64,000 bases of DNA. It comes from Hydrolagus colliei (lineage: Eukaryota). The stretch lies in NCBI GenBank assembly GCA_035084275.1, contig CM068746.1, positions 24,738,001 to 24,802,000 of the forward strand. The letters are read 5' to 3'. Below are positions 11,402-55,169 of the stretch, one piece after another; the first letter of the stretch is position 1; every line of letters starts with the position of its first letter. A model generated the notes under the pieces. The model made no database searches. It worked only from the letters and a program-made list of their open reading frames with translations, and was not told the DNA's origin. The position numbers were made by a program, and so were the translations under genes.

Positions 11402-13097
11402 CAACAACAACAACAACAATTTACATTTATAGAGCGCCTTTCACGTCGGGAGGATGTCCCAAGGCGCTGAACAGAAGGCGTGTGACCCGAGCTGGGAGGG
11501 GAGTGTTTGGGAAGGGGTGAAGCACGAAGGGGAGGTAAAAGAGTTCAGGGTGGAACAAAAGGCACGATCGAAGAGGAAAGTCTTCAAACCGGCCTTGAAA
11601 GAAGAAAGGGAAGAGACGAAATGGAGGGATTGAGGGATGGCATTCCATAAGGTGGGAGCGGAGAAACTGAAGGCCCGGCCTCCGATGGTGGGGCGGTTCG
11701 GGTGGGGGGCTTGGAGCAGGCCAAGTTCTGTTGAACGGAGGGTCCGGGTGGGCGTGTAGGGGGAGAGTAGATCGGTTAAGTAGGATGGGGCAAGGCCATG
11801 TAAGGCCTTGTAGGTGAGGACGAGGATCTTAAACTCGATCCTCTGGAGGATGGGGAACCAGTGGAGACGGGCGAGGGTGGGGGTTATGTGGTCGCGGAGG
11901 CGGGTGCGGGATAGTACACGGGCTGCAGAGTTTTGGATGGCCTGCAGCCTATGAATGGAGGAACTGGGGAGGCCGACTAGGATAGAATTTCCGTAATCCA
12001 GCCGTGAGGTGATGTATGCGTGCACGAGTGTTTCGGCAGCGCGGGGGGTAAGATAATTACGGAGCCTGGCAATGTTGCGCAGATGGAAATAGGCGGTGCC
12101 GGTCAAGGCGCGGATGTGGGGGAGGAAGGAAAGTTTTTGATCGAACATGATGCCGAGGTTCCTGATTGGCTTTGTGAGGTGGCGAGTGCAACCTTGGATA
12201 TTGAGGCTGGCAGTGCCCGATGTGCGGAGGCGCTGGCTTGAGCCAATCAGGAGGGCCTCGGTCTTATTCACGTTCAATTGCAAAAAGTTGTCCCTCGTCC
12301 ACGACTCGATGTCGGACAGACATGCTGTCAGAACATCGATGGTCTGGGGGTTGAGGGATGAAGCAGAAAGGTACAACTGGGTGTCATCCGCATACATGTG
12401 GAAATTTACCCCATGTCTGCGGATGATGTCACCCAGAGGAAGCGTGTAAAGGGTGAAAAGGAGGGGACCGAGGACAGAGCCCTGAGGGACGCCGTGGGAA
12501 ACTGTGCGGGGGTTTGAAGAAAAACCATTGGAAGAAACAAAATGTAAACGGTGGGTCAAATATAAATGGAACCAGTCAAGGACTGTGCCTTGAAGGTTGA
12601 GGTGGGAGGAAAGACGTTGAAGGAGGATGGTGTGATCGACTGTGTCGAACGCAGCAGACAGGTCAAGGAGGACGAGGAGGCAGAGGGAGCCCGGTCACAG
12701 GCGGTTAGGATGTCATTTGTGACCTTAACCAGGGCAGTTTCTGTGCTGTGGATAGGGCAGAAACCTGATTGGAGGGGTTCAAGAAGTGAGTGATTTGAAA
12801 GGAAAGAACGTAGCTGGGAGGCAACCACTCTTTCAAGGACCTTGGATAGAAACGGGAGGTTGGAGATGGGTCGATAACTTGATGGTTGCGACGCATCAAG
12901 GGAGGGTTTCTTCAGGATAGGGGTGATGGTGGCTGTTTTAAGGGAGGTAGGGACGGTGCCTGAGGAGAGGGAAAGGTTGATGGTGTCAGAAATGAGCGGG
13001 GCTAACAAATGGAGCTGGGTGCGGAGGAGGGGGGTGGGGATGGGGTCCAATGAGCACGTGGTGGGTTTCATGGAGGTGATTGTTTTTGTGACTGAAA
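11402..13097 (-). mobile_element. Relatively young 5'-truncated L2 LINE (~1.7 kb), frameshifted reverse transcriptase
   Basis: ORFs 12556-13071 (YRPISNLPFLSKVLERVV..HSTETAL) and 11441-12559 (GVPQGSVLGPLLF, YADDTQLY); (GTT)n tail; flanking ctcagtg duplication. Confidence 0.97.
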
Positions 13098-22237: not shown

Positions 22238-24954
22238 ATATAACTAAATGCTAGCAGTCGTTTGCAGAGAAGCCATTCGTTGACTAATATTTCCATTGCC
22301 ATGGCAGACTTCTCTCTGTGGTAATGGAGTGATGTAGTTTGATGTGGCTTTAGCTGGCAGTCAATACATGGCCTAGTGTCAAAAAGGAAAATGATTTATC
22401 ATTTATATATAGGAGTGCCAAGTTTCATGCAAATCAAATCATCTGGGTTAGGAAGCAGTTGAACATTATCATATAAAGATTATATATATATGTATCTCAA
22501 TGTATGTATTATTCACCAGAATAACCTGTAATGAAATCATTGGGACAACTCAGATGATAACAATAACTGACATTATATAGCTCCCAACACACAGGTAGCA
22601 TCTCAGAGTGCTTGACAGTGTTGGAGCATGACTTGTACGCATGGTCGAATAGGAAGGTCTTCATGAGCAACCAGAAGGTTGGGATGGAGCAAGGCAGGGA
22701 TATAGGGCAAGAGTGTTCCAGAGTTTCTGGGCATTGACTGAAAGCACGGGGACTAATGGTGGAACGGAGGGCATGGGGACATTCAGAAGACTGAAGCCAG
22801 TCGAGCAGAGGCAGCAGGTTGTGGGTTATAGAGTAAGCAGGTCGGAGAGGTAGGAAAATGCCAGGGCATGAATGGATTTGAAAACAAGGGTGAGGACCTT
22901 GACGTGGATAAAGCTGTAGTATATGGACCAGGAGCTACACTGATACAAAATATGGTCCGTGTTAAATTTGCTGCTCTCAGCGGCTGCATGGGGAAGAAAT
23001 TGACTCTGGTCTTTCCAAGATTACAGAGGGGAAAAACAGCTAAAATTCCTGTTGCTGGTCCCTTCTACAGCACCCTCTGTTGGTTGTGAATACATGTAGC
23101 AACTAGATAAGGATAGGCGATGCTTTCTTACCAGTTGAATAGTCTGCCAAGGACACTGCCGAGGCTCACACATGAGAACCCTTGTGATTGGCTCGCAGAT
23201 ATTGATCAACCAACTAGTGACTATCCTCCTTGGTGGGAGGTAAGCGGGGGCTCTGTTCAGCTGAACTGGCCAAGGTGACATGCTTGACAAGGGAATGTTG
23301 GATTTAAGCCATCCCTCTGTGGCAGTCTCAGAAGTCCGCTTCTTGAGCCAGGTTGGTCCGCAGTATTCTAGGGAACTGCTGATGATAGCATAGCCAACTT
23401 AGCTCATTGGCAGGACTTGGAAGGGTAGACCAGTTACTAAGGTCAGGGAATCCTACCACCCAGCTCCCAGCACTTTGGGAGGTCCTCCTGATGTGAAAGT
23501 GTAATTTTGTTGTTTTTGTTGTTAACCCTGCAAGCCAAAGCCCCAACAGGTCTTAGCTGGACAAGCAGCGAGAAGGCTTGCTGGACAGCGATATCAATGG
23601 TTTTAGCTGGTAATACGCCCAACACACACTCTGGGGTCCCTACACCTTGGCTCTTGCCAGCCTGCATCTAATATTTTTTGGAATTAGGTAAGCGGGTTGC
23701 GTTCCTTCAGGAAGAGAGCAAGCATTCCATTCCAACAATCTATCGCTGGAATTTCCATATATAGGTGAGATGTATTGAATTCTCAGTTTGGGTTGGATAC
23801 TTTTAAGCATGGTAAATGGCTTTCTGTAAGTGTGCAACAGATTGGCCAAAAAATAAAAATTGAGTGGAGACTGGAGAACTTGTGGTACCTCACAACAGTA
23901 ATAGGAGATCAGATGAGACACAGAGAGGAAAAGTCAGCAGGAAGAACATTAGAAAAATATTTCTTTAATCTTTATAGTATGTAAATTTTATAAGAATCAT
24001 GAATACTAATCCCAAAACTATTTGTTTGTTTACATTTTGATAACACATTCAACTGCTGCCTAACCCAGCTGGTTTCATTCACATGAAAATTGCAGCTCAC
24101 ATATTTATAAAGTGTTCAGAGCTTCCAATTTATGCACATGCAAACTATTAGAGAGGTGGGGTGTTATATTTGTTGTCATTCATCCAGTAGATTCTTCCAC
24201 ATCCTGACGAGTGGGTGAGCTGAGCAGAAACTTGTGCATATGAAGGTCACTAGAAGAGGCACACTAGGTGTAAGACAAGATGCAGAACCAGTCAGATTGA
24301 TTTCCTCTGAGGTAAAATGTTCCACATCATCTCTGAGCTGCATGGCCTCCGCTCACTAAGGATAGAGTATTGTGTGTCAGACCCATTGTTTTCCTGGCAT
24401 TTTCAAATTATGAGGCAGTTATATAAATGACTGCATTTTGTACATTCAATCCATGACTGTTTGTGGGACACTGCTGTGCGCAATTGTCTGCCATGTTTCA
24501 CCCACAATATATACAGTCAATTCACTTCACAGTGCATTCATTGCTTGACACATCTCAGACATGATAAGGCACTGTATCCAATGCAAGAATTATTATTTTT
24601 ATTATGTAACTTAATTTACTTAGCATTCACAGTTTACTGTCTGTGAATGTATTATCTGAACATACTAACATGGAAATTAGGGACAGGATGTGGCCATTCA
24701 GACCATCCACTTTACCACAGACTGACATACTACCTTCACTAATACCACCTCCTCACCAACTAACATTCAACAATAAACATATGAATCTTTCATTGTTTCC
24801 ATCACTTAGATCCCTCTGCTGATTGCCCACTTGAAGTTTTCTGAGGCAATGCAGTCCAAAACATAAAGAGTACTGTGTCTATGCCGGAACCTGCTTTTGC
24901 TCTGTCTTCACACTCAGCTCTTTCATCTTCTCCCTACGAGTGCTTGGACAATAA

Positions 24955-25250
24955 CAACAATAATAATCCTTGCATTTGATCAAGCACTTTTCACGTCTTC
25001 CAGATGTCTCAAAAAGCTTCACAGAATATAGTGTAAAATGAATTGAATGTATATTTGCGGCAGCCAATTGCACTGACTACAAACAGTGGTGGATTGAAGT
25101 GACCAATTTATAATGGGGGGTTTTTCTTGAGGAATTATTATCAGGTCTGTGGAGTAAGGAAACTTGCCCAAAGCTTTGCTCTGGCAAGAATCGAACCCAG
25201 GTTTCTCACTTGCAAAGCGAGTTCTCTAATCACTGAGTTACAGGACTCCA
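24955..25250 (-). mobile_element. Full-length SINE
   Basis: Reverse head cactgagttacaggactcca. Confidence 0.9.
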
Positions 25251-25559
25251 TAATCCTCATTTCTAATAACCCCTCAACTACCTGAAACACTGGGGCTAAT
25301 TGTAATCCCTCTCCTACCGCTGTGTTATATTGCTAAATCAGTTTAAATCCCAAGGCACCATATTCAGGATCTGTAGTCAGGCCACAATGCATGCTGTTCT
25401 GGAAACAATGAGACTGGCGTGTCAAAGACGTGATAAGGTGCAATATCAAACGCAAAGAGTATTATTATTATTATTATTATTATTAAAGAGACAGCTACCA
25501 GCAATGATGATGATCCCCAGTGTTGGATGTAAAGACCTTTGAGTAGCAATTAGACAAGC

Positions 25560-25880
25560 AAATGCTTCTTAGAAACCTTGAGAGAGCAGGTCTCAGAGCG
25601 GACATTATAGAGGTATATACAATTCTAAAAGGGATTGAAAAAGTAAACCTAGAAGAATACTTTAGGATGTACCAAGACAGTAGAACAAGAGAATACAGGT
25701 TTAGCATTGCAAAGCATAATTTCAGGACAAAACCCAGGTCGATTTTCTTTAACCAACAGTTAATCAATGACTGGAACAAGTTGCAAGGAAGGGTGGTTGA
25801 AGCAGAACATTGGATTAATTTTTTAAAAACATCTTAATATTGTGATGGGAAGATAGTATAGTGGATATTCTGAAGGGATG
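25560..25880 (+). mobile_element. Old CR1 3' fragment
   Basis: LERAGLRADIIEVYTILKG..FFNQQLINDWNKL. Confidence 0.85.
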
Positions 25881-25911
25881 AAATCAGATAAAGGAATGAT
25901 TTTCACCTGGG

Positions 25912-26025
25912 CTAATCTAGAGATTTTCTTTTCGTACCAGTAATATCGCAGACGAGATTTCGAAGAATATAGAGTTGAAAGATAATACTTCGCTTGGATT
26001 CATCTGTGTATTTTGAGCACCTCGC
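25912..26025 (-). CDS. Class II helical cytokine (IL-10 family-like), exon 5 of 5: ARCSKYTDESKRSIIFQLYILRNLVCDITGTKRKSLD*
   Basis: Acceptor tttccag, phase 0, 37 aa + TAG; helix-F-like I..QL.IL pattern; unique DNA between TEs. Confidence 0.75.
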   Translation of the reverse strand, partial: ARCSKYTDESKRSIIFQLYILRNLVCDITGTKRKSLD

Positions 26026-26859
26026 CTGGAAATGTCACACAAATATACATGTAAGAGGAACTTTCAACAGGTCTGCCCTGTGGGCATAAATAAACGTGAA
26101 ATAATCCTATCAACAACAACAAAATTACACTTGTATAGCACCTTTCAAGTCAGGAGGACGTCCCAAGGCGCTGGACAGTCAATGTTTCAGACCTGAGCTG
26201 GGGTCGGGGATGGTGCAGGGGGGATTTGGGGTGACCAATGGGACCATCGAAGAGGAGGGTCTTGAGGTGGGATACCTCAAGTTCTGCATGAATTACGGGA
26301 ACGATTTGCAGATCATGTTTCACTGCATGATCAATGGGAAAAAAGTTTTTCTACATAACTGTATGTGAAGAGTGCTGTCCATGGCTTCTCTTAACTCACA
26401 TTGAAAGCTTAATAAATCCAGTCAGGGTTAAATTTGTTGGTTGGTTTAGCAGCCCATATGCAAAATATACCCCTTCATTCTATGTATTTTGCCCCAAAAA
26501 GCACATAGTCAAATCACTTTACAATATGTCCTGTGATACACTTTCAGACATTGACATGTTACGATGCTATATCAAATACAAGCATTACTTATTATTACTT
26601 CTTATACTTTTCATATTAGCTTTTATTTTTAATAATATTTATTCTATTGTTTTTTTACCTCTTGTTGTGCTTTATTGTCATTTTAAAATTAAATTTACAT
26701 TTTCTCCTTGTCCTTACAAGCAACAGGAAGAAGCTATGTGGCTTTAACTGATCCTACCCCAAAACATAATCTGGAGGTCCCCAAATTTTGACTCTCTCCA
26801 ACATGTCCTACTAGTACTGTATTCAGAATTAGGTATGCAGGTTGCATCCCTAATATATA

Positions 26860-27170
26860 GTAATAATAATCCTTGCATTTGATATAGTGCTTTCACATCT
26901 TCTAAACATCTCAAAGTGCTTCACAGAATATACTGTAAAGTGAATTGACTGTATATTTGTGGACGAAAAGGGGCAGTCAATTGCACAAGTAGAGTCCCAC
27001 AAACAGTTGTCGATTGAAATGACAAATTTTATTGTTGTGTTTTTTTTGAGGGATTATTGTTAGACGTGTGGAGTAAGGAAACTTGCCCAAGGTTTCACCC
27101 TGACCTGCCTGGATTTGAACACAGGTCGAATTGTAAGGCGAGTGCTCTAACCACTAGCTACAGGACTCCA
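26860..27170 (-). mobile_element. Full-length SINE (intron 4 of the cytokine)
   Basis: Reverse head gctacaggactcca, body and tail. Confidence 0.9.
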
Positions 27171-27821
27171 TCCTTTCAGGGAGAGTGTGCACATTTGTTT
27201 TCAGACACAGGAGATTTTTCATGCATAGGTGATATGTATAAGTGGAACTCTCAATCATGTTTGGATACCTTTAAGCATGGGGTTTTAAGTTTCCACATCT
27301 ATCAGTCATGTACTGACCCCAAAAAAAGCCTGGCTCAGAATGAGCAATTGAAGGCAATTAGCTGCCGTATTTTGCCCACAAAATATACAGTCAATTCAAT
27401 TTACAGTATATTCTGTGAAGTGCTTTGAAACGTCTCAAAGACATGATAAGGTGCAATATAAATTGCAAGGATTATTATTATTATGGAAGTGGGATAATAA
27501 TAGTAATCCTCACATTTGATATAGCGCTCTTCACATCTTCTAGATGTTTCAAAGTGCTTCACAGAATATGCTGTAAAGTGAATTGACTGTATATTTTTGT
27601 GGTCGATCCACATGTGAGGGAATCTACATCTTTTAAATGAAAACTGATTTCATAGGTCAGTCTTCCAACCAACACTGGTAGTGAACGTTAAAATTCCAAA
27701 ATGTCCAATATGCAACAATGCTCAGTGGCATTTACTGCTGGTCAGGAAATAATTACTTAAGTTTTAAGCTTTGAAGTACAGCAGAGATACTATTATTTTA
27801 TACCAAATCTCAATCTATTAC

Positions 27822-27893
27822 CTTGCATATTTCTTCTTCCAATTTTCTGATGGCCCGTTTAGCCTTCAAATCCTTTAAATACTTGCATTCATC
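27822..27893 (-). CDS. Class II cytokine exon 4: DECKYLKDLKAKRAIRKLEEEICK
   Basis: gtttcag|72 nt|gtaata; phase 0/0; amphipathic helix; size typical of IL-10-family exon 4. Confidence 0.78.
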
Positions 27894-28639
27894 CTGAAAC
27901 ATATTACAGTTGGAACAAAATGCATGTGTTAGTATTCATTCTGAGAAAACTTAAAGAAGTTCCCTTGTATGTTTATTTTCTACAATGAATATCTTCACAC
28001 AGAGTCCAACTAATTTTACGTCAATTTTGCCGCTGCTGACTGTTCTCCTAGCAGATTTACTCATTTACGATTCTCATTACCAAGTGTCAAGATGAAAATT
28101 GATTCAGCAATCGATTTCGGCATTTAATGGTGACGCTTAAATAAAAATATAATCCTGGCATTTGACGTAATGCCTTAACAAGTCTTTGAGAAATCTCAAA
28201 GCATATCACATACTAGATAGTGAATTAACTGTGTATTTTGTGGGTGAAGCATGGCAGCCAATTGCACACAGCACTGTCCCACAAACAGCCATGGAGTGTT
28301 AAGTATTAATCACTTGCATTGATAAGCATTGAAACATCTCATAGAAAGAAGGCACTTTGAGATGTTCCCCTGTGAAAAGTGCTATATACATTGAAATTGC
28401 ATTGTATATTACTGTATTATTAACTCTATGAAGTGAGTGACCAATTTTATTTGGGGGATTGTTGGTTAGGACACCGGAAGAAACTCCTTTTGAATAGTGC
28501 CATGGGATCTTTGTGGAGTCCTGTAGCTCAGTGGTTAGAGCACTCGTCTTATAAGCGTGAGACCTGTGTTTCGAATCAAGGCAGGGCGAAACCTTAGTTC
28601 CACAATTTAGTTACTTTTTTGCACAGATGCTGGAAATCT

Positions 28640-28995
28640 AGAAACCTATAAGATTATTAAGGGTCACGACAGAATAGATAGTGGGAGACTTTTTCCCCTG
28701 GTTGGAAAAACTATAACCAGGGGTCGCAGTCTTAGTCAGTGTTACAATCACAGTCTTTCGCACTTTCACCCGGAGGTTAGTGAATTTATGGAATTCTCTA
28801 CCCCAAAGGGCTGTAGATGCTCAGTCCTTGAACATATTCAAGACTGAGATTGATAGATTTCTTGTGGATAAAGGGATTAGGGGATAAGGCAGGTAGGTGG
28901 AGTTAGAATAGATCAGCCATGATCTTATTGAATGGCGGGGCAGGCTCGAGGGGCCGAATGGCTTACTCCTGCTCCTAATTCTTATGTTCTTATGT
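28640..28995 (+). mobile_element. CR1 3' end
   Basis: ..gaatggcggggcaggctcgaggggccgaatgg..ttcttatgttcttatg terminus. Confidence 0.9.
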
Positions 28996-29187
28996 TTTTT
29001 GGGTGAGTTACTTATCTGAGAAAATGTAATAGCTAATCAGGAAACAGGACATTCCACAAATATCAATGAAGCAATTGACCAAATAATCTGAATGAAGGAG
29101 GAATTTGGGGATAACATTGGGATAACTCCCTACTCCTCCTTGAAATTGTGCTACATCACCAATTGAACAGGTTCACTGTTTAACCAA

Positions 29188-29380
29188 CAAAAACACAAAA
29201 TACTGCAGATGCTGGAAATCTGAAACAAGGGTTAAGGGTTAATCCTTAAAAGCCTTTCCCTCTGAACAAGCTCCAGTTCTGACGAAGGGTCGTGGACCCT
29301 AAACGTTGACTCACTTTTCCTTTCTCCATAGATGCTGCCTGACCTGCTGGTTGTTCCCAGCGATTTCTATTTTTGTTTCA
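29188..29380 (+). mobile_element. Short shark-type repeat (Penelope-like terminal remnant)
   Basis: aaatactgcagatgctggaaatctg..ctgacgaagggtc..gatgctgcctgacctgctg; partial copies near 28621 and 31675-31765; family assignment from memory. Confidence 0.6.
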
Positions 29381-30328
29381 TTGTTTAACTTCTTATGTGA
29401 GGGATAAGGGACTGATGATGTAGGTTTGTCGTTGTTAACCTAAGATGAAGACTGCTTTCAGTTTATGAAAAACTTTTTCTAAAAGAGTCCTTTCCAAAAC
29501 TTAGTGGGTGAAATAAGTATCGTACATAGTTAGAGCAGAAGAAATAAGTAAATGGTAAAGATAAAGTTAAAATCCTGAGATTTAGGGAGGAAGGGAAAAG
29601 TGATGGCAGACTAAACAAAACTACAACAATAACAACTTACAGTTACATAGCACCCTTCATGTGGGGATGTGTATCAGACTTTTTAATAGTGACAGAGCTG
29701 GACACTGAGCCACTGAAACCGGGTCTCTCACTTGCAAGCAGAGTGCTCTAACCACTGATCTGCAGGGGTGTGAGTTTGAGAGATGTTACAGTGAACAAAT
29801 TTACATGTTTACCCACAAGTACATACCGGTAGTCACTATATTTTACAATAAAATCCTGTAAGTCTTGAAATAAGGCACTATATCAAATGAAAATTATTCA
29901 TCTGGCCCAACTTGTTTGTGTTGGTGTTGATACTTCACCTAAGCTTCCACACCTCCCTATCCCCTCTCCCATATCCCTCTGGTCCCTTCTCTCTCTGCTG
30001 CAATCATCAAGTTTCCTCTTAAATATATTAATGCTTTCTGCCTCAACTATAGCTTATGGGAGTGGGATCCATATTCTTACCGCTATCTGAGTAAAGAGGC
30101 TCATTGTAAACTCTCTTTTAGATCTGTTACCAGCTATTTTGTGGTGTCCTGTACCTTAGTGGTTAGAGCACTCTTCCCACAAGCAAGAGAACTGGATTTA
30201 ATTCCGAGCAGGGAACAATGTTGGGTAACTTTCCTTACTCCACATGCCTTTGTTTATCTAGCAGTTTTCCCAGAAAAGCAATCCACCAATCGACTAACAA
30301 CCGGGTTCCTATTTACTGCTTATTAATA

Positions 30329-30652
30329 GTGGAGCTCCTGTAGCTCAGTGGTTAGAGCACTCGCTTTACAAGCGTGAGACCTGTGTTCGAATACAGGCAG
30401 ATCAAGGCGAAACCTTGGGCTAGTTTCCTTATTCCACACACCTAATAATAATCCGTCCCCAAAAAAATCATAATAATAAAAACTGGTCATTTCAATCCAC
30501 GACTGTTTGTGGGACACTGCCTTCCACAATTGGCTGCCACGTTTCGCCCACAAATATACAGTCAATTCACTTTACGGTAAAGTCAATTTACTTTGAGACG
30601 TTGATAAGATGTGAAAAGCGCTATATCACATGCAAGGATTATTATTATTACT
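30329..30652 (+). mobile_element. Full-length SINE, preceded by a partial long-type SINE (~30140-30322)
   Basis: Intact A box, near-intact B box, body, (att)n tail. Confidence 0.92.
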
Positions 30653-31108
30653 ATACACCTAAACAGAGGCTTGTGGAGTAAGGCAACTTGCCCACTATTT
30701 TGCCCGGCCATAGACACTTATCACTGCTGACATCCGAGTAAATCTGTGCTGCATTCTCCATTGCTACAATATCCTTCCTATTGTATGAGGACCAAAAATG
30801 CATATAGTACCCAAATATGGTCTACCCAAGGTTTTGGTTGCATTTAGCATCACTTCCGTGTTAAATATATTTAATATTATAGTAAGATCGTCACATAATC
30901 AGCCATGCAATCCCGACAATGTATACCGTTTTAAAAAAAATAAATTTGTTATACATTTTACACCTTCCCTCTGGGAAACCGAAGAATGTTATTTAGGTCT
31001 TCTAAGATGGGAAAAAAAGACGGTAGATTTAGAGCCACGCATGAATTTGAAGCAAATAAGTTTTACAGACAGGATTTGGATATATTAGGGAGGGGAAAGT
31101 TGACTTAC

Positions 31109-31255
31109 ACATCTTGTCTTGGCATACATTTCCTCGATATAATGTTTAACTTTGATGAGATCCTGCCTGAGACCCTCTGGCATCTGTCGGTATTGTTTCA
31201 AGAAAATCAAATAGAATTCCAAAGCCTTCTTCAGAACAGTGCACTTGCCGTGTTC
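31109..31255 (-). CDS. Class II cytokine exon 3: EHGKCTVLKKALEFYLIFLKQYRQMPEGLRQDLIKVKHYIEEMYAKTRC
   Basis: ttttttgctgacag|147 nt|gtaagt; C-x7-E-F-Y-L resembles IL-10 helix C (CQALSEMIQFYL); ends in Cys like IL-10 exon 3. Confidence 0.9.
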
Positions 31256-31363
31256 CTGTCAGCAAAAAAGCAATCATTAAAAACCCGAATAGCCCAGGTA
31301 CAGCTGCAACACAGAACAAAAAAAACACATCGGATCGTTAGGCGAATGCAAAGCAGAACTTAC

Positions 31364-31432
31364 TGTCATTTTGCCAAGCTTTGGCATGATTCGAAAGCCT
31401 CCCCCCTCGCTCAAGGATGATCCCCAAGAATG
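31364..31432 (-). CDS. Class II cytokine exon 2: HSWGSSLSEGGGFRIMPKLGKMT
   Basis: aatgcag|69 nt|gtaagt; phase 0/0; short exon 2 typical of the family. Confidence 0.85.
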
Positions 31433-31987
31433 CTGCATTTCAACACACACAAAAGGAAAGAGGGATTAAGTATAAAGGGACTAAAAGTTGCGAGAATCCT
31501 GCTGCCCCTAATAATATATTGGAGTGAGTGAGTGAGTGTGTGTGGGGTGGGGGGGAGGAGTGACAAGGTAATCTGTTCCTTTGAAACGCATATTCTTTCA
31601 TTTCATTACATTACATTACATTGGACAATGATAATAATAATAATAAGGATCGCAGAGCCAACACTCTACTATCAAAACACAAAATACTGTACATGCTGGG
31701 AGTCTGAGACAAAAACAGAAGGATGCTGCCTGACCTGCTGAGTTTCCCCAGAAACTTCTGTTTTTGGTGCTGCTATCAATATTGTTTTAAAACAGATATA
31801 CCCCAGAATGATGGTAAAAGAACACGACTGTGTTTCTCTCTCTCTCTGTCTCTCCTTCTCTTGCTTAAGTAGGAGCGTCCCAGATAAAGGAACAGAATTG
31901 TGAAGCTTACAATAGTATTTGTGTATGTGTATGTATATGTATGTATGTGTGTGTGTAGATATATATATATAAATAAATGTGAATCAC

Positions 31988-32131
31988 CTGCGAGACCGTC
32001 ATGACATTTTTCACACACAGAATGAAATCCTGGATCAGAATATCCATCACATTGGGTTTGCAAGTGGAGTTGGATGTTCCTGCAGCACACACCCCGAGTG
32101 AGATCAGGAGACAGGCAACCAGAGACAGCAT
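31988..32131 (-). CDS. Class II cytokine exon 1: MLSLVACLLISLGVCAAGTSNSTCKPNVMDILIQDFILCVKNVMTVSQ
   Basis: ATG preceded by an in-frame stop; hydrophobic signal peptide; CAG|gtgatt donor; TATA box 82-88 nt upstream. Confidence 0.88.
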
Positions 32132-32212
32132 ATTGAATCAGGTGTGTTTGGGAGGGTGATCGCCTGTTATCACTGTCACCACTGACGGCGGTTTCGGGCT
32201 AAATGCCTTCTT

Positions 32213-32425
32213 ATTTATAGGCTGGGTTTAGCAAAGGAGCATCCACCCTTTACCCTCCCCCCCCCACCCACTCCCTCCCCCCAGAAAGGAGGTCAATCTT
32301 AAATGCCCATCCCTCCTGCTCGGCCCACGAGGAATTGGGGGAAAACGAAATAAAGTTTCCAAATGTTGAGCTAATTTTGGGGTCAGATACGGGGGTGGGG
32401 AGAGTCCCTTTGCTTTTCTAGGTCA
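32213..32425 (-). promoter_or_regulatory. Promoter of the class II cytokine: TATA, IRF-E, kappaB and RORE-like half-sites
   Basis: TATAAAT 32219-32213; GAAAACGAAA 32341-32350; GGGACTCTCC (minus) 32399-32408; RGGTCA at 32290, 32380 and 32420. Confidence 0.65.
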
Positions 32426-36431: not shown

Positions 36432-39400
36432 CATAAGAACATAAGAATTAGGAACAGGAGTAGGCCATTCGGCCCCTCGAGCCTGATCATGGCTGATCTT
36501 CTCACCTAACTCTAATTACCTGCCCTATCCCCATATCCCCTAATCCCACTATTTTTTAGAAATCAATCGGTCTCAGCCTTGAAAATGTTCAAGGACTGAG
36601 CATCTACAGCTTTCTGGGGTTGTGAATTCCATAAATTCACTACCCTCTGAGTGAAGAAATATTTCCTCAACTCTCTTCTAAAAGGCTGACACTTAATTTT
36701 AAGATTATGACCCCTGGTTATAGATTCTCCTATCAGGAGAAACAGTCCCTCACTGTCTACTTTATCCAGCTCTTAAAGAATCTTATATATTTCAGTAAGA
36801 TCTCCCCTAATTCTTCTGTACTCTAGAGAATACAGCACTAGTTTATTCAACCTCAGGCCCGTACGCAGGATTTTTAATGGGGGGGTGCGAATTGCTAGTG
36901 ATGGGACCAACAATGGCCGGGGGCTTGCGGGCTACCCCCGAAGCCCCCTCGAGGTCTCCGACGTTTTACACAGTTTGCGTACGCACCCGTCGCACCCCCC
37001 TGCATACGGGCCTGTTCATGCAACTCCGCTTTCAAAATTCATGTCGAGCATAAGACCACCTGCATAGAATCTATTTTGATTTGATAGATGAGCAGGTGAT
37101 TGAAGATTAACAAACATGTGCTGTAGGTACACTGTTACTAATACACATAAATTGCAGAAGTATTGACAAAGATTAACCAACTTGCAAATTAGCAATGTAG
37201 ATGGAACTATATTAAGCTAAAGGCAGCTTCAGAGAATTAAAAGCAGGACAGGAGACATGTGTAAGCTTTAAAATAATGAAAGACGATAGTAGATACGGGC
37301 ATATATCGGATTGCACAACTTCAACGCAGTTCAGCCCTAGGTCATAAAATAATTATTTTAAAAATAAGTATGAATAACACAGGGAAATAAGAATTGCGGA
37401 AGATTAGACTTGTTGATTTTGTACAAGAATATAACAGCATTGGTACCGAGTGTATCGCTAGATTGCATATGACTATAGAAAATGGTGGCAGCATTTATAA
37501 TACAAATTATACATTGTGCTTAAACAGTGGAGGAATAGACATACATATTTGGGATTCTCGTTATCTTCGACCCCATTTTTCAGTATTAAACTTAAATTCT
37601 GCATTCCTGGGACTATCCTTGTAATCTAGTTTACACACTGTCTAAGGCTGTGGCATCCTCCCTACAGCGTGGGAATCAGAACTGAAGACAGTTCTCTAGA
37701 TGCGGCATCACTGCTGTTTTATAAGGTTCATCATAACATACAGACATAATAATAAATGGTCATTGTTGTATTTGGCATTGCACTTTTCACGACTCAGAGA
37801 CGTCTCCATACTCTCGACAGAATATACTACTGAATGAAATGTGTATGTATTTTTGGGCGAAACGTGATAGCCAGCAGCGCTCAACAGTCTCCCACAAACA
37901 GCCATGGATTTAAATGATAAATTTGCTATTGTTTTCTTGATGGATTATTATCAGTCTTGTAGACTGTGGAAACATATCAAAGGTTTCGTGCCTACCTTGA
38001 AATGAATACTTAGCTCTCGCTTTTAATGTGACCGTTCTGACCACTGAGGTACAGAAATCCACAAAATGTTTAAAGTGTGCAATGCGTTTAGACAGTTCAA
38101 GTCTCTATAACTGCTGAGTGTTTTTTTTTAGCAACTACTCAGTTTCAGATCAATGTAGCCTCCTTACTGACATCGACATTTCGTCACTACCATTATTACT
38201 TATGTTACTGCACTGTTGTTTTGATAACATGGGATTTAACATTCCTAACAAGGGTATTAGGCAGCAATTCACCGAGAAGCATTGTAGAATCGATATATCC
38301 TGCAGCAAATGCACTACATCCATTGTCCTTCACCTTTACCTTATTACAATGTGGATGAAAGGCAGATAGATAACCAAGTCCAGATTGGATGCCAAACAGG
38401 TTGCTGAGGGACGTAAGGGTGGAAATAACAAAACCGTTGACCACAATGTGCCAATTCTCATTGACATCAGGATGGTGGCAGAGGATTGGACCATTGCAAG
38501 TGCTACTCACCTGTATAGAAAAGGGCCGAGGGATAAACCGTGATCTCAAATCGATCAGCCTAATTAATTGGTTTGATTTTTTCTTACAAACTACAGTCTG
38601 AGAAGAAAATATTGTTTCACTCACAAGCAAAAATAGTTAATCAAGGACAGCTAACTGAGATTTCTTCAAGCAAACTCGTTTCTGACAAACGTGCTGGAGA
38701 TTTTATGATGAAGTTACACAGAGGATGTATCAATGTGGTGAAGTTATGTAACTGATATAGTTTTCCAAAATACATTTCATAATGTTCCACATAAGAGACT
38801 TGAATACAACACACTGTTAAAAAGGGCCGATATGCTCCGTTAACCCGGCCTTGCGGTATCCGGATTTTCAGCCTCTCTGGCCACACACTCTGGAACTCCA
38901 TCACACAGTCCTTTCCCCTCTTTTACCCCTTGCTTGCTGCAAGGCCGGTCACAAGAACTTACTTTTCGTGCCTTCTGCCGCACTCTAACCTCTTCACATC
39001 ATTTCGCCCCAATCCTTCAGCTCCCCCATGCTCGGATCCCGACCGCTGAATTTCTAGCGCATTGTGAGATCCTCCCATCGTGAAAAGACTCTCTAATATT
39101 TTTCTTGTAATGGTACCATGGACAGCGAACTGCCTGGGAGACAAGTAACAGAGGGAATTCTACGCTAAACAACGCCATTCTCTACCCCGGAAAATGTGGA
39201 CCTTTTATAATTTAGGGGGGTGCGTACGCACCCGTCGCACCCCCCCTGCGTACGGGCCTGAACCTATCCTCATAGGTCAGTCCCCTCATCCCAGGAAATA
39301 ACCTGGTGAATCTACCCCTCTAAGGCAAGTATGTCCTTTATTAAATAAGGAGACCAAAACTGCACACAATACTCTAGGTGATGTCTCACCAAAGCCCTAT

Positions 39401-39715
39401 CCAGTTGCAGCAAGACTTCCCTACTCTTGTATTCTAAACCTTTTGCAATGAACGCTAACATGCCGTTTGCCTTCTTAGTTGCTTGCTGCACCTGCAAACT
39501 AACTTTTTGAGACTGGTGTACAAGGACACCCAAATCCCTTTGTACACTAACACTATCTAACCTCTCCCCATCTAGAAAATAATTTGTTTTTTTATTTTTG
39601 CTACTTAGGTGAATAACTTCACACTTCCCCACATTAAATTCCATCTGCCACCTACTCGCCCACTCCCCTAGCCTATTTATATCTTGTTGCAATCTTTTTA
39701 CATCACCAACGTAAT
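36432..39715 (-). mobile_element. 5'-truncated CR1 LINE split by a DNA transposon
   Basis: Terminus cataagaacataagaa at 36432; ORF 39312-39692 QQDINRLGEWASRWQMEFNVGKC..RDLGVLV..LEYCVQFWSPY. Confidence 0.93.
36854..39260. mobile_element. 2.4-kb non-autonomous/composite TIR element with 5-bp TSD (aacct)
   Basis: Perfect 16-bp TIR CAGGCCCGTACGCAGG / CCTGCGTACGGGCCTG; aacct at 36849-36853 and 39261-39265; extra right end at 36976-37014. Confidence 0.88.
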
Positions 39716-39799
39716 TGACTGGGGATCGGGCAAGGGGTTATTGAGGAGGGATGGGGAGAGTATTGGCAGCTGAAAGCATGATTGATGATAATGCAATAC

Positions 39800-42213: not shown

Positions 42214-42339
42214 TTAAGGCCTTGGTCGCCGTCTGCCTCCAATGTTGCTCCTGCGTTTTCTTTTCCCACTTACGTTCATTCTTGGTAGTAGCATTTCAAG
42301 TTCAAGGATTGCTTTGCGTTGGACTAAATGCTTATCCCA
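42214..42339 (-). CDS. IFNG: Interferon gamma exon 4: WDKHLVQRKAILELEMLLPRMNVSGKRKRRSNIGGRRRPRP*
   Basis: tcttcaatag acceptor; IFN-gamma signature core [IV]QxKAxxEL; KRKRR basic tail; TAA stop. Confidence 0.97.
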   Translation of the reverse strand, partial: WDKHLVQRKAILELEMLLPRMNVSGKRKRRSNIGGRRRPRP

Positions 42340-42409
42340 CTATTGAAGAGAGACAGAAACACTAAATTTATAACAGAAAATGATAAAAACTAGTAATATG
42401 AAAGAAGGT

Positions 42410-42780
42410 CTCAGCTTGGCTCACTCTGGGCCAGGAAGTTATGGATTACCAATGTGAGATGTGAGTTCATGGTCAAGGTTGATAGTCAAATGCAATACGA
42501 GGGGAGCACTGCATTGGAGGTGCCATTAAATCTGTCTATGTATCCATATGTTGATGTTAAAGATCCCACTTTACTGTTCAAAAGGTAAAGGATGTTTCTC
42601 TAGGTGTCCTGGGTAATAACCATCCAGAGGCAATGGTCATTCACTTGATGTATATGCGACCTTGCTGTGAGCAAACCATCTGTGGCATGTGCCTAGAAAA
42701 CCAGTCACTACACCTGCCAGGAATGACCTCTTTGAGCCACTTTGAGAAGATATGATATTACAGGCGCTATATCAAATTGG
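42410..42780 (+). mobile_element. Ancient Deu-SINE remnant in IFNG intron 3
   Basis: gatgttaaagatccca..gtgtcctgg..cttgctgtg..ggcgctatatcaaat. Confidence 0.7.
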
Positions 42781-42817
42781 AGCATTATTATTTAAAATAC
42801 ATAAAATGGGAGTTTAC

Positions 42818-43018
42818 CTGAATGTTGTCTAATTTATTGAGGTCAGATTTCAGTTCCTCTGGTTTGTATTTGTCCTCTACAATCCGCCTAGAAATTAGAT
42901 TCCCAATGTTGCTAACTTCCAGTCCGTCGTGCTTTCCAGGAGCGTCTTTGATGTTTTTAAAGAAATTTTCGTACCAGAGCAGAATCCGATGAAACACAAT
43001 CCCCTTTTCAGGCAAGTT
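42818..43018 (-). CDS. IFNG: Interferon gamma exon 3: NLPEKGIVFHRILLWYENFFKNIK...ELKSDLNKLDNIQ (67 aa)
   Basis: tttcccag|201 nt|gtaaac; phase 0/0; helix-C I...Y..FF pattern. Confidence 0.95.
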
Positions 43019-43116
43019 CTGGGAAATATAGCATCACATTAGCAATCGCGATCTGGATTAGTTTCTGGAGAGAATTCCAATGCAAATGAAAATTCGGGCT
43101 AAAAACACAATCTCAC

Positions 43117-43182
43117 CTTCCACTTGTTCAGAATATTCACGAACAGCGGCCCACCTTCAGCCAACTCATGGCTGCTTGTATT
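43117..43182 (-). CDS. IFNG: Interferon gamma exon 2: NTSSHELAEGGPLFVNILNKWK
   Basis: ttttgcag|66 nt|gtgaga; aligns with human exon 2 [23 protein letters not shown]. Confidence 0.97.
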
Positions 43183-43297
43183 CTGCAAAACAATTAGGAT
43201 TACAAATCACACATCCACCATCACTGCTGCATACAGGTTTACAGATTTCACAGGGTTGCAAGTTCGACAAGTACGGTTCATTAATCCCGCTCAATCA

Positions 43298-43625
43298 GCA
43301 ACAACAAGAGCAACCAAATTACATTTGTAGAGCGCCTTTCACGTCGAGAGGATTGTCCAAGGCGTTGGACAATCAGTGTTTCGGACCCGAGCTGAGGTCG
43401 GGATCAGGGAGGGTTGGAGGGAAGGGAGGTGACCGATGGAACGGTCGCAGAGGAGGGATTTGAAGCCGGTATTTGAAAGAGGCTGGGAAGGGGGTGAGGC
43501 GGAGGGATTGCAGGATGGAATTCCAATGCTTGGGGGGGGTGGTTGCAGAGTGGCTGAAGGCTTCCCCCTCCACTGCCCACCGATGGGGGGGCGGGGGGGG
43601 GGGGGGGGGGGGGGGGGCAGAGGTG
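43298..43625 (-). mobile_element. L2 3' fragment with poly-G run in IFNG intron 1
   Basis: aattacatttgtagagcgcctttcacgtc tail; G-run ~43585-43617. Confidence 0.85.
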
Positions 43626-43813
43626 GTGGTGGGTGTGGGGGGGGAGACACGGAGCAGACCAATTGGAGGCTCCCCTAGTCGTTTACGACGTTACCAATTC
43701 ACGCGCACCAGCCAATGGTGTCAGCGTCTCTAACCGTGTAGTTTTAAGCCAGTGATGGTTACCGAAACGGGTCGGGTGTGTCAACTCTGAGCGAGTGGGG
43801 ATGTGGTACTTAC

Positions 43814-43924
43814 AAAGCGCGACTTCAGCTGATTCAACTCGTCCTGGACACGGTCGCAGCTCACAGAGCTCAGCAATAAAAGTGAAACACAAGAGGCCAA
43901 CGCAAAGATCCCACGCAGCTTCAT
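43814..43924 (-). CDS. IFNG: Interferon gamma exon 1 (coding part): MKLRGIFALASCVSLLLLSSVSCDRVQDELNQLKSRF
   Basis: Kozak-like gccATG; signal peptide; E...LK..F helix A; donor gtaagt. Spliced protein is 167 aa. Confidence 0.97.
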
Positions 43925-44049: not shown

Positions 44050-44470
44050 TTTTATACCCGCCGCTTGTGTATTTTTGGCTCCTCAAAAATACCCACCTCA
44101 CACTTGATTTGCAAATCCATTGTTGTAGCGATGGTGTCAGATAGGCACACACACACACACACACGTTGGTGTAACCCTGAGGTTTGGTTTTTGTGGGGTT
44201 TCAATGCAATGTTTCCTTTAAACAGCGACACCTGACGCATCGCCTAGATTACGTATAATGTACCCTGATACCCACCCCCACCACCCCCTCACTTGTTGTT
44301 CAACGTGATCCTCGAAAGACCAGCCAGTCAGTGTCTCTAGAGTCCAAGGGGGAAAATCCTTGTTGTGGTTGTTTGAAGCCAATCACCAAACCGCGGGTTT
44401 TTGAGAAGCAGTCATCATTTCTTTTTAATGAATAAGATGACAAAGCGGGTGTGGTCTCTGTGACTCGGGG
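44050..44470 (-). promoter_or_regulatory. IFNG: IFNG proximal promoter
   Basis: TATAAAA 44056-44050; TACGTAATC 44255-44247; CRE half-site TGACG 44233; RUNX TGTGGT near 44364 and 44450; CpG-rich and TE-free. Confidence 0.75.
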
Positions 44471-45759
44471 GGGGGGGGGGATGAGCTGTGAGCCGCAAAA
44501 CATTTAGAGAGAGAGAGAGAGACCCTTACATCAATCGCTGGTCAATCAAAAAGTCTCTCCCCTCACCACCAGCTCCCAACATTTAAATGTCCTCAACTTA
44601 GAGAAATGTTGCCCCCCATCCACCTCCCCTCCCCACCCAACCACCAAAAGTGCAGCTGAACTTTTCAGAATGAATTGCGAGTCTTAACTCGTTTTGTTTT
44701 ACAACGCTAACGTTAACTTGTTCGCTCTTGTGACTGACTCTCCAAGCAGGCTTACTGTTCGCATGAGCAGTGTGTGCAGGTTGGACCTATAGAGTCTCTT
44801 AGAGTAGTCACTGTGTAAGGTGCAACAAGCATCTGTTCTTAGTGCAATGCAGTGTTTGTGGCCGATTGCATTTTAATTGAACTGACCAGAGTATGAAGAC
44901 ATAATTCTCAACAGTAACCGTTTATAGGATGTTTCTCTATAGGATATACTTTTACCCCCCCTCCCCCCGTTTCTTCTTCTTTGCTTTCTTAAAGCTACTG
45001 CTTAATACAAATGATGCAAGGAAGTCAGTTTGAAACTGAGGTTTTCACACCTTGTCTTTCATTACACAGTGGAGGCAAATGTCTCATGCAGCCTTTCTTT
45101 TTGGAAATTCAGACAGATGAGCAATCTTTCTACCAAATGGTCCTTACTCAGCGGAATTCTCCACCCCAAAAAATGACAAAATTGTTGCATCTTTTCCACT
45201 GTTTCATTGTTTCTCGGGGCTGACGAAGGTCAGACCGCAAGGATTTGCCATTTTCACGCACTGATCTTCTGAATTAAACCATTGGACTGGTTTGTCTACA
45301 AATTGTAAAAGGTATATACCTTATTACGTTAAGGATTGCATTGTTAACCAGCAGCAGTGGCTAGACAGTAATCGTGAGGAGGCCGGGTCTATCTAAATAC
45401 TTTCACACGCTTTCTTGCCGCAGGTGTCTTGCTAGTGTTACTAGCATTCATGCCAGCCCTGTTATGGGGGCCCTGTAGGTGGACATGAATTACACAGTGT
45501 GATTGCATAGTTTGGAGAAGTTGTAGATCACGCTCGGGAAACCAATACGTACCACAGCCTGCAAATAAATAAAGAAGCAAAAGATTATTTGGAATAACAT
45601 TGCTTTGCAAATGCACCACAGCTTCAGTCAAAGACATACACCATTCTACGTGCAAGTGTCTCGCAAGTTGCAGATGATTAAAAGTCACTGGGTGCAACAT
45701 TGTTTTTCTGAACTTTAACTAGAGGAACCTAAATCTTCACTTAGCGCTGACATTAATAA

Positions 45760-46055
45760 TAGTAGTAATAAGACTTGCATTTTGATATAGTGCTTTAAAC
45801 ATCTTCTAGATGTCTCAAAGTGCTTACAGAATATGCTGTAAAGTGAATTGGCTATATTTGTGGGCAAAACGTGGCAGCCAATTGCACACAACAGTGTCCC
45901 ACAAACAGTCGTGGATTGTAAATGACCAATTTATTATAGATTTTTTTTGAGGGATTGTAATGAAGGAATCTTGCCCAAGGTTTTGCCCTGGCTGGATTCA
46001 AACACAGGTCGCATGTTTAAGGTGAGTGCTCTAACCACTGAACTACAGGACTCCA
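45760..46055 (-). mobile_element. Full-length SINE
   Basis: Reverse head ccactgaactacaggactcca. Confidence 0.9.
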
Positions 46056-47969: not shown

Positions 47970-48355
47970 ATTCAATTCCTTCCTCCATAGGCTGAAAATA
48001 ATCCAGAACTCTGTGGCTCGTGTGCTCTGCCGCTCCAAGCTTCGTGATGCCATCTTCCCCATCCTCGACCAACTCCATTGGCTCCCCCATCACCCAGAGG
48101 ATTCAATTCAAGGTTCTGGTCCTCACTTTCAAAGCCTAGCATGACCTCGCCCCACCATACCTCTGCAACTTCCTTACCCCCTACCAACTTGCCCGCCCGC
48201 TCCACTCAGCAGGCTCCGGCATGCTACATGTCCCCCGACCCACCCACCCCACTATTGGTGCGTGAGCCTTCAGTCTTCCATCCCGCAATCCTTCTGCTTC
48301 GCCCCCTCCCTAGCCTCCTTCAACTTCTGCTTCAAGTCTCTCCTCTTCGACGGTC
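47970..48355 (+). mobile_element. L2 ORF2 fragment
   Basis: LHRLKIIQNSVARVL..ILDQLHWLP. Confidence 0.85.
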
Positions 48356-55160: not shown

Positions 55161-55169
55161 ATTACATAA

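What the first reader, a model, noticed from the sequence alone, without database searches (positions are those of the whole stretch)
25912..32219. Hidden 5-exon class II cytokine gene downstream of IFNG, possibly an undescribed IL-10/IFN-family member
Seen: five minus-strand exons (32131-31988, 31432-31364, 31255-31109, 27893-27822, 26025-25912), all GT-AG and phase 0, splice without stops into 181 aa: MLSLVACLLISLGVCAAGTSNSTCKPNVMDILIQDFILCVKNVMTVSQ|HSWGSSLSEGGGFRIMPKLGKMT|EHGKCTVLKKALEFYLIFLKQYRQMPEGLRQDLIKVKHYIEEMYAKTRC|DECKYLKDLKAKRAIRKLEEEICK|ARCSKYTDESKRSIIFQLYILRNLVCDITGTKRKSLD. It has a signal peptide, an NST glycosylation site and a TATA box. Established: five phase-0 exons with this size pattern characterise IL-10/IL-22/IL-26 and IFN-lambda genes, and in the conserved cluster the transcriptional order is MDM1-IL22-IL26-IFNG. 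Inference: a class II cytokine 3' of IFNG is in an unexpected position and may be a chondrichthyan-specific or ancestral paralogue. Only exon 1 appears in the ORF track.
Basis: partly seen in the sequence, partly recalled or inferred. Interest (0 to 1): 0.92.

Follow-up and report, generated by a model that had tools for sequence, protein, structure and literature searches.

The report
Chimaera IL-26-like cytokine gene beside IFNG
This is a real five-exon gene for a secreted, strongly positively charged helical cytokine lying 10 kb behind the interferon-gamma gene of a chimaera-like fish, and it is the counterpart of the "IL-26-like" gene already printed for the elephant shark in 2015, so it is a little-known gene rather than an undescribed one.

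Summary
Five minus-strand exons sit at the stated coordinates, all GT..AG and phase 0, with TATAAATA 81 nt before the ATG.

The claim of novelty does not hold. Yamaguchi, Takizawa, Fischer and Dijkstra 2015 (PMC4690019, passages) print a deduced 173-aa elephant shark "IL-26L" found in the IFNG locus. By eye it lines up exon by exon, without gaps, at 123 of 173 residues.

In read laying, a 631-nt contig of a related organism lies on exon 3 alone (31110-31254). Bin depths show a contig of the same depth exactly on exon 4 and on exon 5. All 5 amino-acid-changing differences shown give the elephant-shark residue, and the other 6 are silent. The gene is therefore conserved and spliced in a relative.

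IFNG (four exons, 43924-42214, minus strand) ends 9,995 nt upstream. The gene thus lies 3' of IFNG, whereas human IL26 lies between IL22 and IFNG.

Exon-wise Pfam, PDB, Atlas and 1.84-billion-protein searches found nothing. Searches and folds of the joined protein were left out by rule, so the family is assigned from gene structure, charge (31 K/R, net +12), helices and locus.

The scan had not found this before on other DNA. Verdict: orthologue of a described but neglected gene; its true relation to IL-26 is unresolved.

The parts
32212..32219 (-). TATA box (TATAAATA), 81 nt upstream of the start codon
   Evidence: Read and printed. The transcription start itself was not mapped.
31988..32131 (-). 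Exon 1, coding part (48 aa): start codon, hydrophobic leader, N-S-T sequon, start of helix A; donor CAG|GTGATT
   Evidence: 31/48 residues identical to elephant shark IL-26L (by eye). This exon was outside the stretch laid.
31364..31432 (-). Exon 2 (23 aa), phase 0 on both sides
   Evidence: 14/23 identical to elephant shark IL-26L (by eye). Only a low depth of the relative's contigs falls in this bin.
31109..31255 (-). Exon 3 (49 aa), the best conserved exon; folds on its own as a helix-loop-helix
   Evidence: 42/49 identical to elephant shark IL-26L (by eye). Run X2 contig 16 (631 nt) lies on 31110-31254 only. AlphaFold2 of this piece gives helices 2-21 and 27-46, mean pLDDT 88.9.
27822..27893 (-). 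Exon 4 (24 aa), lysine/arginine-rich (8 of 24)
   Evidence: 17/24 identical (by eye). X2 depth in the two bins (4.7 and 2.3) equals a contig of depth 19.2 over 48 + 24 nt, that is exactly this exon. The difference at 27860 lies 34 letters from the piece end, which puts that end at 27893.
25912..26025 (-). Exon 5, coding part (37 aa plus stop TAG at 25914-25912): last helix and a basic tail, 8 aa longer than in elephant shark
   Evidence: 19/29 aligned residues identical (by eye). AlphaFold2 of this piece gives one helix, 8-29, mean pLDDT 85.8. X1 and X2 depth in bin 25870-26069 is 16.5 and 15.9. There is no AATAAA or ATTAAA until 1,308 nt after the stop, so the 3' end is unknown.
42214..43924 (-). 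Neighbouring gene: interferon gamma (IFNG), four phase-0 exons (37+22+67+41 aa), same strand; its stop is 9,995 nt upstream of the IL-26L TATA box
   Evidence: The exon 2 piece matches Pfam IFN-gamma PF00714 at E 0.0064, 16.8 bits, below the full-length cut-off of 23.9. The other 3 of 4 pieces gave no family. PDB and Atlas searches with exon 3 found nothing.

Best explanation
The stretch is the orthologue, in another chimaera-like fish, of the elephant shark gene published as IL-26L. It is an intact five-exon, phase-0 gene, 6.3 kb from TATA box to stop, lying 10 kb 3' of IFNG on the same strand. It encodes a precursor of about 181 aa with a cleavable leader. The mature protein of about 163 aa is an all-helical, strongly cationic class II (IL-10-type) cytokine. 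Shown here: the gene structure, the orthology, the locus, the charge, helices in the two pieces folded, and a spliced, conserved contig in a relative. Inferred: it is secreted. It signals like the IL-20-subfamily member IL-26, through a class II receptor pair that includes IL-10R2 and an IL-20R1-like chain, then JAK1/TYK2 and then STAT3/STAT1. Its lysine/arginine-rich C-terminal helices may also bind nucleic acid or microbial membranes, as in human IL-26. I put the identity part at about 0.85, the IL-26-like mode of action at about 0.45, and true IL-26 orthology at about 0.5.
For: Exons, phases and splice sites. Orthology: PMC4690019 prints elephant shark IL-26L, found in the IFNG locus, with expression seen in SRA data, an IL-10-family exon organisation, a Phyre2 hit to IL-10 at 52% confidence and some cysteines shared with IL-26. 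By eye the five exons align to it without gaps: 31/48, 14/23, 42/49, 17/24 and 19/29, together 123/173. Locus: IFNG is 9,995 nt upstream on the same strand. Relative's contig: X2 record 16 lies on exon 3 only; equal depth (19.2) covers exactly exon 4, and depth consistent with it covers exon 5. Of 11 differences shown, 6 are silent and 5 give exactly the elephant shark residue. Charge: K 21 + R 10 against D 8 + E 11, net +12, with 8 Cys in 163 aa, counted exon by exon. Human IL-26 has 30 K/R in 171 aa, pI 10.77, five exons, lies next to IFNG in the same orientation and uses the IL-20R1/IL-10R2 receptor (PMC6379347 passages). Helices. Homologues of IL-10RA/B and IL-20RA/B are reported for C. 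milii (PMC12652433 passage).
Against: No sequence search supports the family. The 5 exons tested one by one gave 0 Pfam families at E up to 10. PDB gave 0 relevant hits for the 4 exons tested. The 1.84 billion representatives gave 0 hits for exon 3. The Atlas gave only unnamed hits at 0.78 or lower. These are weak tests on 23-49 aa pieces, and the joined protein was not searched or folded. The gene lies on the other side of IFNG from IL26 of human. The 2015 authors themselves call the similarity to IL-26 minimal and note that there is no typical IL-10 signature in the last helix. The exon-exon joints were not displayed, because the table was swamped by intronic repeats, so splicing is inferred from piece borders and equal depth. 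Runs X1-X3 are only guessed to be RNA and come from one study. No transcript evidence was obtained for the window's own species. Exon 1 was outside the laid stretch.
Confidence: 0.85

Rival explanations
1. IL-26L is not IL-26 at all. It is a separate, old class II cytokine paralogue that sits on the DYRK2 side of IFNG, was kept in holocephalans (perhaps all cartilaginous fish) and was lost in bony vertebrates. It may have a receptor pairing of its own.
For: It lies 3' of IFNG, whereas human IL26 lies between IL22 and IFNG. The 2015 authors report only minimal similarity and no typical IL-10 signature in the C-terminal helix. No exon reaches any Pfam IL10/IL22 model. The 20 kb upstream of IFNG shows no recognisable class II cytokine exon (0 of 144 pieces), so that region holds no ordinary IL-26.
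Against: The gene is adjacent to IFNG in the same orientation, has five exons, shows a very similar excess of K/R (31 here against 30 in human IL-26) and shares cysteines according to the 2015 paper (data not shown there). All of this fits a diverged IL-26. The upstream scan is a weak test: the same method finds 0 of 5 IL-26L exons and 1 of 4 IFNG pieces.
Confidence: 0.3
2. It is an interferon-type gene rather than an IL-10-family member: a type III or type IV interferon relative, or an IFN-gamma-related tandem copy.
For: Five phase-0 coding exons are also the plan of fish type I IFN, multi-exon type III IFN and IFN-upsilon (PMC8863823 passages). The gene stands in tandem with IFNG, as IFN-gamma-rel does in teleosts.
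Against: IFN-upsilon lies between ADARB2 and PFKP, also in elephant shark, and not at the IFNG locus. IFN-gamma-rel is reported as a teleost-specific duplicate of IFNG, and the IFNG here has four exons, not five. Phyre2 matched the orthologue to IL-10.
Confidence: 0.07
3. It is a chance chain of open frames or a dead gene copy without function.
For: No database protein or family matches any exon. No canonical polyadenylation signal occurs within 1.3 kb of the stop. No RNA run of the window's own species was found.
Against: The frame is intact with four canonical introns. Identity to the elephant shark protein is 71% without gaps, highest in exon 3. Six of the 11 differences shown are silent. 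A relative's contig has pieces confined to the exons. The authors of the 2015 paper report expression of the orthologue.
Confidence: 0.03

Closest known systems
Elephant shark (Callorhinchus milii) IL-26L, Yamaguchi, Takizawa, Fischer and Dijkstra 2015, Biology 4:814 (PMC4690019)
   Same: Collinear without gaps over all five exons (123/173 identical by eye). It is reported in the IFNG locus with an IL-10-family exon plan. Seven cysteines of the mature part fall in the same places, and the last helix is equally atypical.
   Different: It is from another species (about 71% protein identity; about 90% nucleotide identity in exon 3 against organism A's contig). The protein here is 8 residues longer at the C-terminus, with an extra cysteine and a KRK motif. 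The N-S-T sequon here is absent from the printed elephant shark sequence. The gene order in the paper's Figure 2 could not be seen.
IL-26 of tetrapods and teleosts (IL-20 subfamily of the IL-10 family)
   Same: Five exons, next to IFNG in the same orientation, similar size (171 aa in human), a very high K/R content, and predicted helices (for human; here).
   Different: Human IL26 lies between IL22 and IFNG, that is upstream of IFNG, whereas this gene lies downstream. No significant sequence match was obtained, and none could be sought with the joined protein. Human IL-26 is said to have four conserved cysteines, against eight in the mature part here.
IL-10 and IL-22
   Same: Class II helical cytokines with five phase-0 exons of similar size order. 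Exon 3 encodes a helix-loop-helix. Phyre2 matched the orthologue to IL-10 at 52% confidence.
   Different: No exon reaches Pfam IL10 or IL22. The 2015 authors report no typical IL-10 signature in the last helix. My own recollection of the conserved C-terminal motif of IL-10/IL-22 agrees, but it is recall, not a test.
IFN-upsilon (type IV interferon) and teleost IFN-gamma-rel
   Same: IFN-upsilon also has five phase-0 coding exons and occurs in elephant shark. IFN-gamma-rel is also a tandem neighbour of IFNG.
   Different: IFN-upsilon sits between ADARB2 and PFKP. IFN-gamma-rel is a teleost-specific IFNG duplicate and is of the IFNG type, not the five-exon type.

Membership tests
Orthologue group of elephant shark IL-26L | Collinear sequence similarity over the whole protein | tested here: met
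   By-eye count against the sequence printed in PMC4690019: 31/48, 14/23, 42/49, 17/24, 19/29, with no gaps.
Orthologue group of elephant shark IL-26L | Position in the IFNG locus | tested here: met
   IFNG (Pfam IFN-gamma hit on the exon 2 piece, E 0.0064; four-exon model) ends 9,995 nt upstream on the same strand.
Orthologue group of elephant shark IL-26L | Transcribed and spliced | tested here: inconclusive
   In a relative (organism A), pieces of a 631-nt contig are confined to exon 3, with equal depth on exons 4 and 5. The joints were not displayed, the runs are only guessed to be RNA, and nothing is available for the window's own species. The 2015 paper reports SRA support (data not shown there).
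IL-10 family / class II helical cytokines | Five coding exons, all introns phase 0 | tested here: met
   The plan is stated for IL-10-related cytokines in PMC8863823.
IL-10 family / class II helical cytokines | Significant match to a family profile (Pfam IL10, IL22) | tested here: inconclusive
   0 families for each of the 5 exons at E up to 10. The pieces of 23-49 aa are too short for a fair test, and the joined protein was not searched, by rule.
IL-10 family / class II helical cytokines | Six-helix bundle fold | tested here: inconclusive
   Only pieces were folded. Exon 3 gives two helices and exon 5 gives one helix. The whole fold was not predicted. Phyre2 on the orthologue gave IL-10 at 52%.
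IL-10 family / class II helical cytokines | Secretion signal | not tested
   A hydrophobic leader is seen by eye. No predictor was available.
IL-26 proper | Gene between IL22 and IFNG (upstream of IFNG) | tested here: not met
   The gene lies 3' of IFNG. The human order is taken from PMC6379347. IL22 was not found in the window (a weak test).
IL-26 proper | Unusually cationic protein | tested here: met
   31 K/R against 19 D/E in 163 aa, net +12. Human IL-26 has 30 K/R and pI 10.77.
IL-26 proper | Sequence or phylogenetic grouping with IL-26; shared cysteines | not tested
The 2015 paper claims shared cysteines (data not shown there).
IL-26 proper | Signals through IL-20R1/IL-10R2 | not testable with these tools
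   Needs binding and STAT assays.

The most novel reading that the evidence does not exclude
IL-26L is a distinct, ancient class II cytokine lineage and not a displaced IL-26. [quoted passage not shown] It would have independently acquired, or ancestrally held, the cationic DNA- and membrane-binding character, and it might use its own receptor chain.
Probability: 0.3. Interest if true: 0.55.

Novelty: new member of a known kind. Interest (0 to 1): 0.3.

Why it matters
The IFNG-IL26-IL22 cluster is a textbook example of conserved immune synteny. Surveys still date IL-26 no further back than reptiles or bony fish (PMC12652433 passage).

A second holocephalan copy of IL-26L is intact, conserved at 71% and lies on the 'wrong' side of IFNG. 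This shows that the elephant shark gene is not an assembly or prediction artefact. It also gives a clear exon model for finding the gene in sharks and rays.

It sharpens a question that can be tested: did the cationic, DNA-binding IL-26 type of cytokine exist in the first jawed vertebrates? Practically, the gene appears to be missing from the protein collections searched here, so annotators will keep overlooking it.

Tried and rejected
**Searches that found nothing**
- Pfam on each of the 5 exons gave nothing.
- PDB sequence search on 4 of the 5 exons (1, 3, 4, 5) gave only chance hits at E 0.84 or worse.
- phmmer of exon 3 against 1.84 billion representatives gave 0 hits. I take this to mean that neither this gene nor the elephant shark one is in that collection. 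I therefore spent none of the three homologous-protein searches, whose length window (0.55-1.75 times the query) could not have seen a full-length relative of a single exon.
- The Atlas on exon 3 of the gene and on exon 3 of IFNG gave nothing at 0.8 or above.
- The PDB search with IFNG exon 3 gave nothing.

**Scans of the window**
- I looked for IL22/IL26 upstream of IFNG by scanning 144 stop-free minus-strand pieces of 36 aa or more from 44303-63800 against Pfam. There were 0 cytokine families, and the best E of 0.0096 was for an unrelated hydrolase, which is chance for 144 queries. Pieces shorter than 36 aa, the plus strand and 1-25900 were not scanned. In 1-25900 I only noted that the list of ORFs of 90 aa or more shows no long kinase-like ORF, so DYRK2 is probably outside the window.
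- tblastn of the single exons against the window found no paralogues.
- The bacterial promoter/terminator scan was a wasted call on a eukaryote and shows nothing.

**Readings considered and rejected**
- IFN-upsilon was rejected by its locus.
- IFN-gamma-rel was rejected by exon number and by its reported teleost-specific origin.

**Earlier findings**

**What I could not see**
- Figure 2 of PMC4690019, which shows the gene order in elephant shark.
- Its supplementary files 1 and 2 (positions, ORFs). They may already show IL-26L 3' of IFNG.

Full report
**What is in the sequence.** Reading the flanks and a script show four introns of 555, 108, 3,215 and 1,796 nt. Each starts with GT (three of them GTAAGT or GTAATA) and ends with AG behind a pyrimidine-rich tract. 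All exon lengths are multiples of three, so every intron is phase 0. TATAAATA lies at 32219-32212, 81 nt before the ATG.

**What surrounds it.** Stop-free pieces of the minus strand upstream and the DNA itself give a four-exon, phase-0 gene at 43924-42214 (37+22+67+41 aa). It has its own TATA box. Its second-exon piece matches Pfam IFN-gamma (PF00714, E 0.0064, 16.8 bits; 1 of 4 pieces matched). Its last exon ends in a run of basic residues which, from recall, is typical of IFN-gamma. PDB and Atlas searches with its third exon found nothing. I accept it as IFNG. Its stop codon is 9,995 nt upstream of the TATA box of the gene in question, on the same strand.

**What it is.** A full-text search led to Yamaguchi, Takizawa, Fischer and Dijkstra 2015 (PMC4690019). 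I read passages only: the Figure 2 legend, section 4 and part of Table 1.
- It says that expression was confirmed in SRA data (not shown) and that the gene has the intron-exon organisation typical of the IL-10 family.
- Phyre2 predicts several alpha-helices and similarity to IL-10 at 52% confidence.
- The last helix lacks a typical IL-10 signature, and some cysteines are shared with IL-26.
- The name was chosen 'despite the minimal similarity'.

I compared the printed sequence by eye, block by block. The two align without any gap. Identities are 31/48, 14/23, 42/49, 17/24 and 19/29, together 123/173 (71%). The protein here runs 8 residues further at the C-terminus. This is an orthologue in a different holocephalan. 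Earlier notes of this scan also call the genome chimaera-like.

**Evidence from reads.** The run search gave three runs of one study from 'organism A', guessed to be RNA and sharing 0.05-0.07 of the words. It also gave one run of 'organism B' that holds 0.79 of the stretch, probably the source or a near relative, as DNA.

The single read-laying run (25470-31469, exons 2-5, likeness from 90) was swamped by high-copy repeats inside introns 3 and 4. 11,832 joints were not shown, so no exon-exon joint is displayed. Three things are still readable.
- X2 record 16, a 631-nt contig of depth 19.2, lies only on 31110-31254. That is within one base of both ends of exon 3. It aligns as its letters 159-303, with 14 other letters and no gap.
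- X2 depth in the two bins that hold exon 4 is 4.7 and 2.3. This is what a contig of depth 19.2 gives over 48 and 24 nt, exactly the exon. The difference at 27860 is 34 letters from the end of its piece, which puts that end at 27893, the acceptor. The bin with exon 5 has 15.9.
- A 631-nt genomic contig could not reach across a 3.2-kb intron, so a spliced molecule is the simplest reading. This is an inference from equal depth and borders.

X1 shows the same differences in exon 3 at depth 5.5 but nothing on exon 4. X3 shows nothing in the exon bins. A script placed the 11 differences displayed in exons 3 and 4. Six are silent third-position changes. The five that change a residue (four in exon 3, one in exon 4) each give exactly the residue printed for elephant shark IL-26L. 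Organism A therefore carries the elephant-shark type of the gene, and the frame is under purifying selection.

**Family assignment.** That covers search, exact look-up, profile comparison and fold of the 181-aa model.

Exon-wise searches are blank:
- Pfam gave 0 families for 5 of 5 exons at E up to 10.
- PDB sequences gave nothing relevant for the 4 exons tried.
- The 1.84 billion representatives gave 0 hits for exon 3.
- The Atlas gave no hit at 0.8 or above.

These blanks say little, because the same approach recognises only 1 of 4 IFNG pieces. What supports a class II, IL-10-type cytokine is the following:
- the five-exon phase-0 plan, stated for IL-10-related cytokines in PMC8863823 (passages);
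- the position in the IFNG cytokine cluster;
- the leader (by eye);
- helices in the two pieces folded: exon 3 as a helix-loop-helix at pLDDT 88.9 and exon 5 as one long helix at 85.8;
- the published Phyre2 result for the orthologue.

**How close to IL-26.** Counting exon by exon, with an 18-residue leader left out, the mature protein has 21 K, 10 R, 8 D, 11 E and 8 C in 163 residues. The net charge is +12, and exons 4 and 5 are especially basic.

Human IL-26 is described (PMC6379347, passages) as follows:
- 171 aa with 30 K/R, pI 10.77, six helices and four conserved cysteines;
- five exons, located between IL22 and IFNG, in the same orientation as IFNG;
- signalling through IL-20R1/IL-10R2, JAK1/TYK2 and STAT1/STAT3;
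- binding DNA through its cationic helices.

Size, exon plan, adjacency to IFNG, orientation and charge therefore agree. The side of IFNG does not.

I looked for another candidate in the 20 kb upstream of IFNG. 144 stop-free minus-strand pieces of 36 aa or more gave no cytokine family in Pfam, and the five exons have no second copy in the window. IL22, MDM1 and DYRK2 were not located.

Secombes and Zou 2017 (PMC5332411, passage) say that elephant shark IFNG lies next to IL22, between MDM1 and DYRK2. That would fit IL-26L on the DYRK2 side, but they do not mention IL-26L. I could not see Figure 2 or the supplements of the 2015 paper.

**Rivals.**
- IFN-upsilon has the same exon plan and occurs in elephant shark, but it lies between ADARB2 and PFKP.
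- IFN-gamma-rel is reported as a teleost-specific IFNG duplicate (PMC6640115, passages).
- A chance chain or pseudogene is contradicted by the conservation pattern.
- The live question is whether IL-26L is a displaced IL-26 or a separate old paralogue. I put these at about 0.5 and 0.3.

**Is it in print elsewhere?**
- The term search found 2 papers. One is the 2015 paper. The other is a lupus paper of which I saw only the listing.
- The searches found 12 papers and 1 paper. None describes the gene further. I read passages of PMC4929537 and PMC12652433 and saw only the listing of the rest.
- The 2025 survey (PMC12652433) traces IL-26 only back to a reptile. It traces IL-10, IL-10RA/B and IL-20RA/B back to C. 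milii. So the ligand is overlooked, while candidate receptor chains are reported.

**Verdict.** This is a real, conserved gene that is apparently unannotated. Its kind has been described, so it is a new member (orthologue) of a known kind. Its location 3' of IFNG is shown here in sequence. Its mode of action is inferred from IL-26.

Noticed in passing
window 42214-43924 (-): Complete four-exon, phase-0 IFNG gene (167 aa) with a TATA box (GTATAAAAA) near 44055 and a basic C-terminal tail. Only its exon 2 piece reaches Pfam IFN-gamma (E 0.0064).
   Followed up: partly
window 26070-26269, 26670-27669, 28070-29469, 30070-30669: Introns 3 and 4 of the gene are filled with very high-copy repeats. 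Summed contig depth reaches up to 1.3e7 in run X4 and 6e5 in X1, against about 60-190 over the exons. These repeats are shared between organisms A and B and explain the 5-7% word share of runs X1-X3.
   Followed up: partly
window 11441-13071 (-) and 39315-39737 (-): Long open frames that look like reverse-transcriptase parts of retroelements (372 + 171 aa, and 141 aa), judged by eye and untested. A similar short frame at 25562-25837 (+) lies just behind the gene's stop codon.
   Followed up: no
window 23500-25911 (-): No AATAAA or ATTAAA until 1,308 nt after the stop codon (24603). Only two ATTTA motifs occur in the first 1 kb. The 3' end of the mRNA is not defined.
   Followed up: partly
window 43585-43650 (-): A long C-rich homopolymer-like tract (a proline-rich frame in all readings) inside IFNG intron 1. 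GGGG/CCCC-rich tracts also lie just upstream of the IL-26L TATA box (32230-32400).
   Followed up: no
window 31920-31985 (-): A TA/CA microsatellite directly after the exon 1 donor site.
   Followed up: no
window 25912-25950 (-): The C-terminal tail is 8 residues longer than in the printed elephant shark protein and adds a cysteine and a K-R-K motif. I did not test whether this is a real lineage difference or a different stop in the elephant shark prediction.
   Followed up: no
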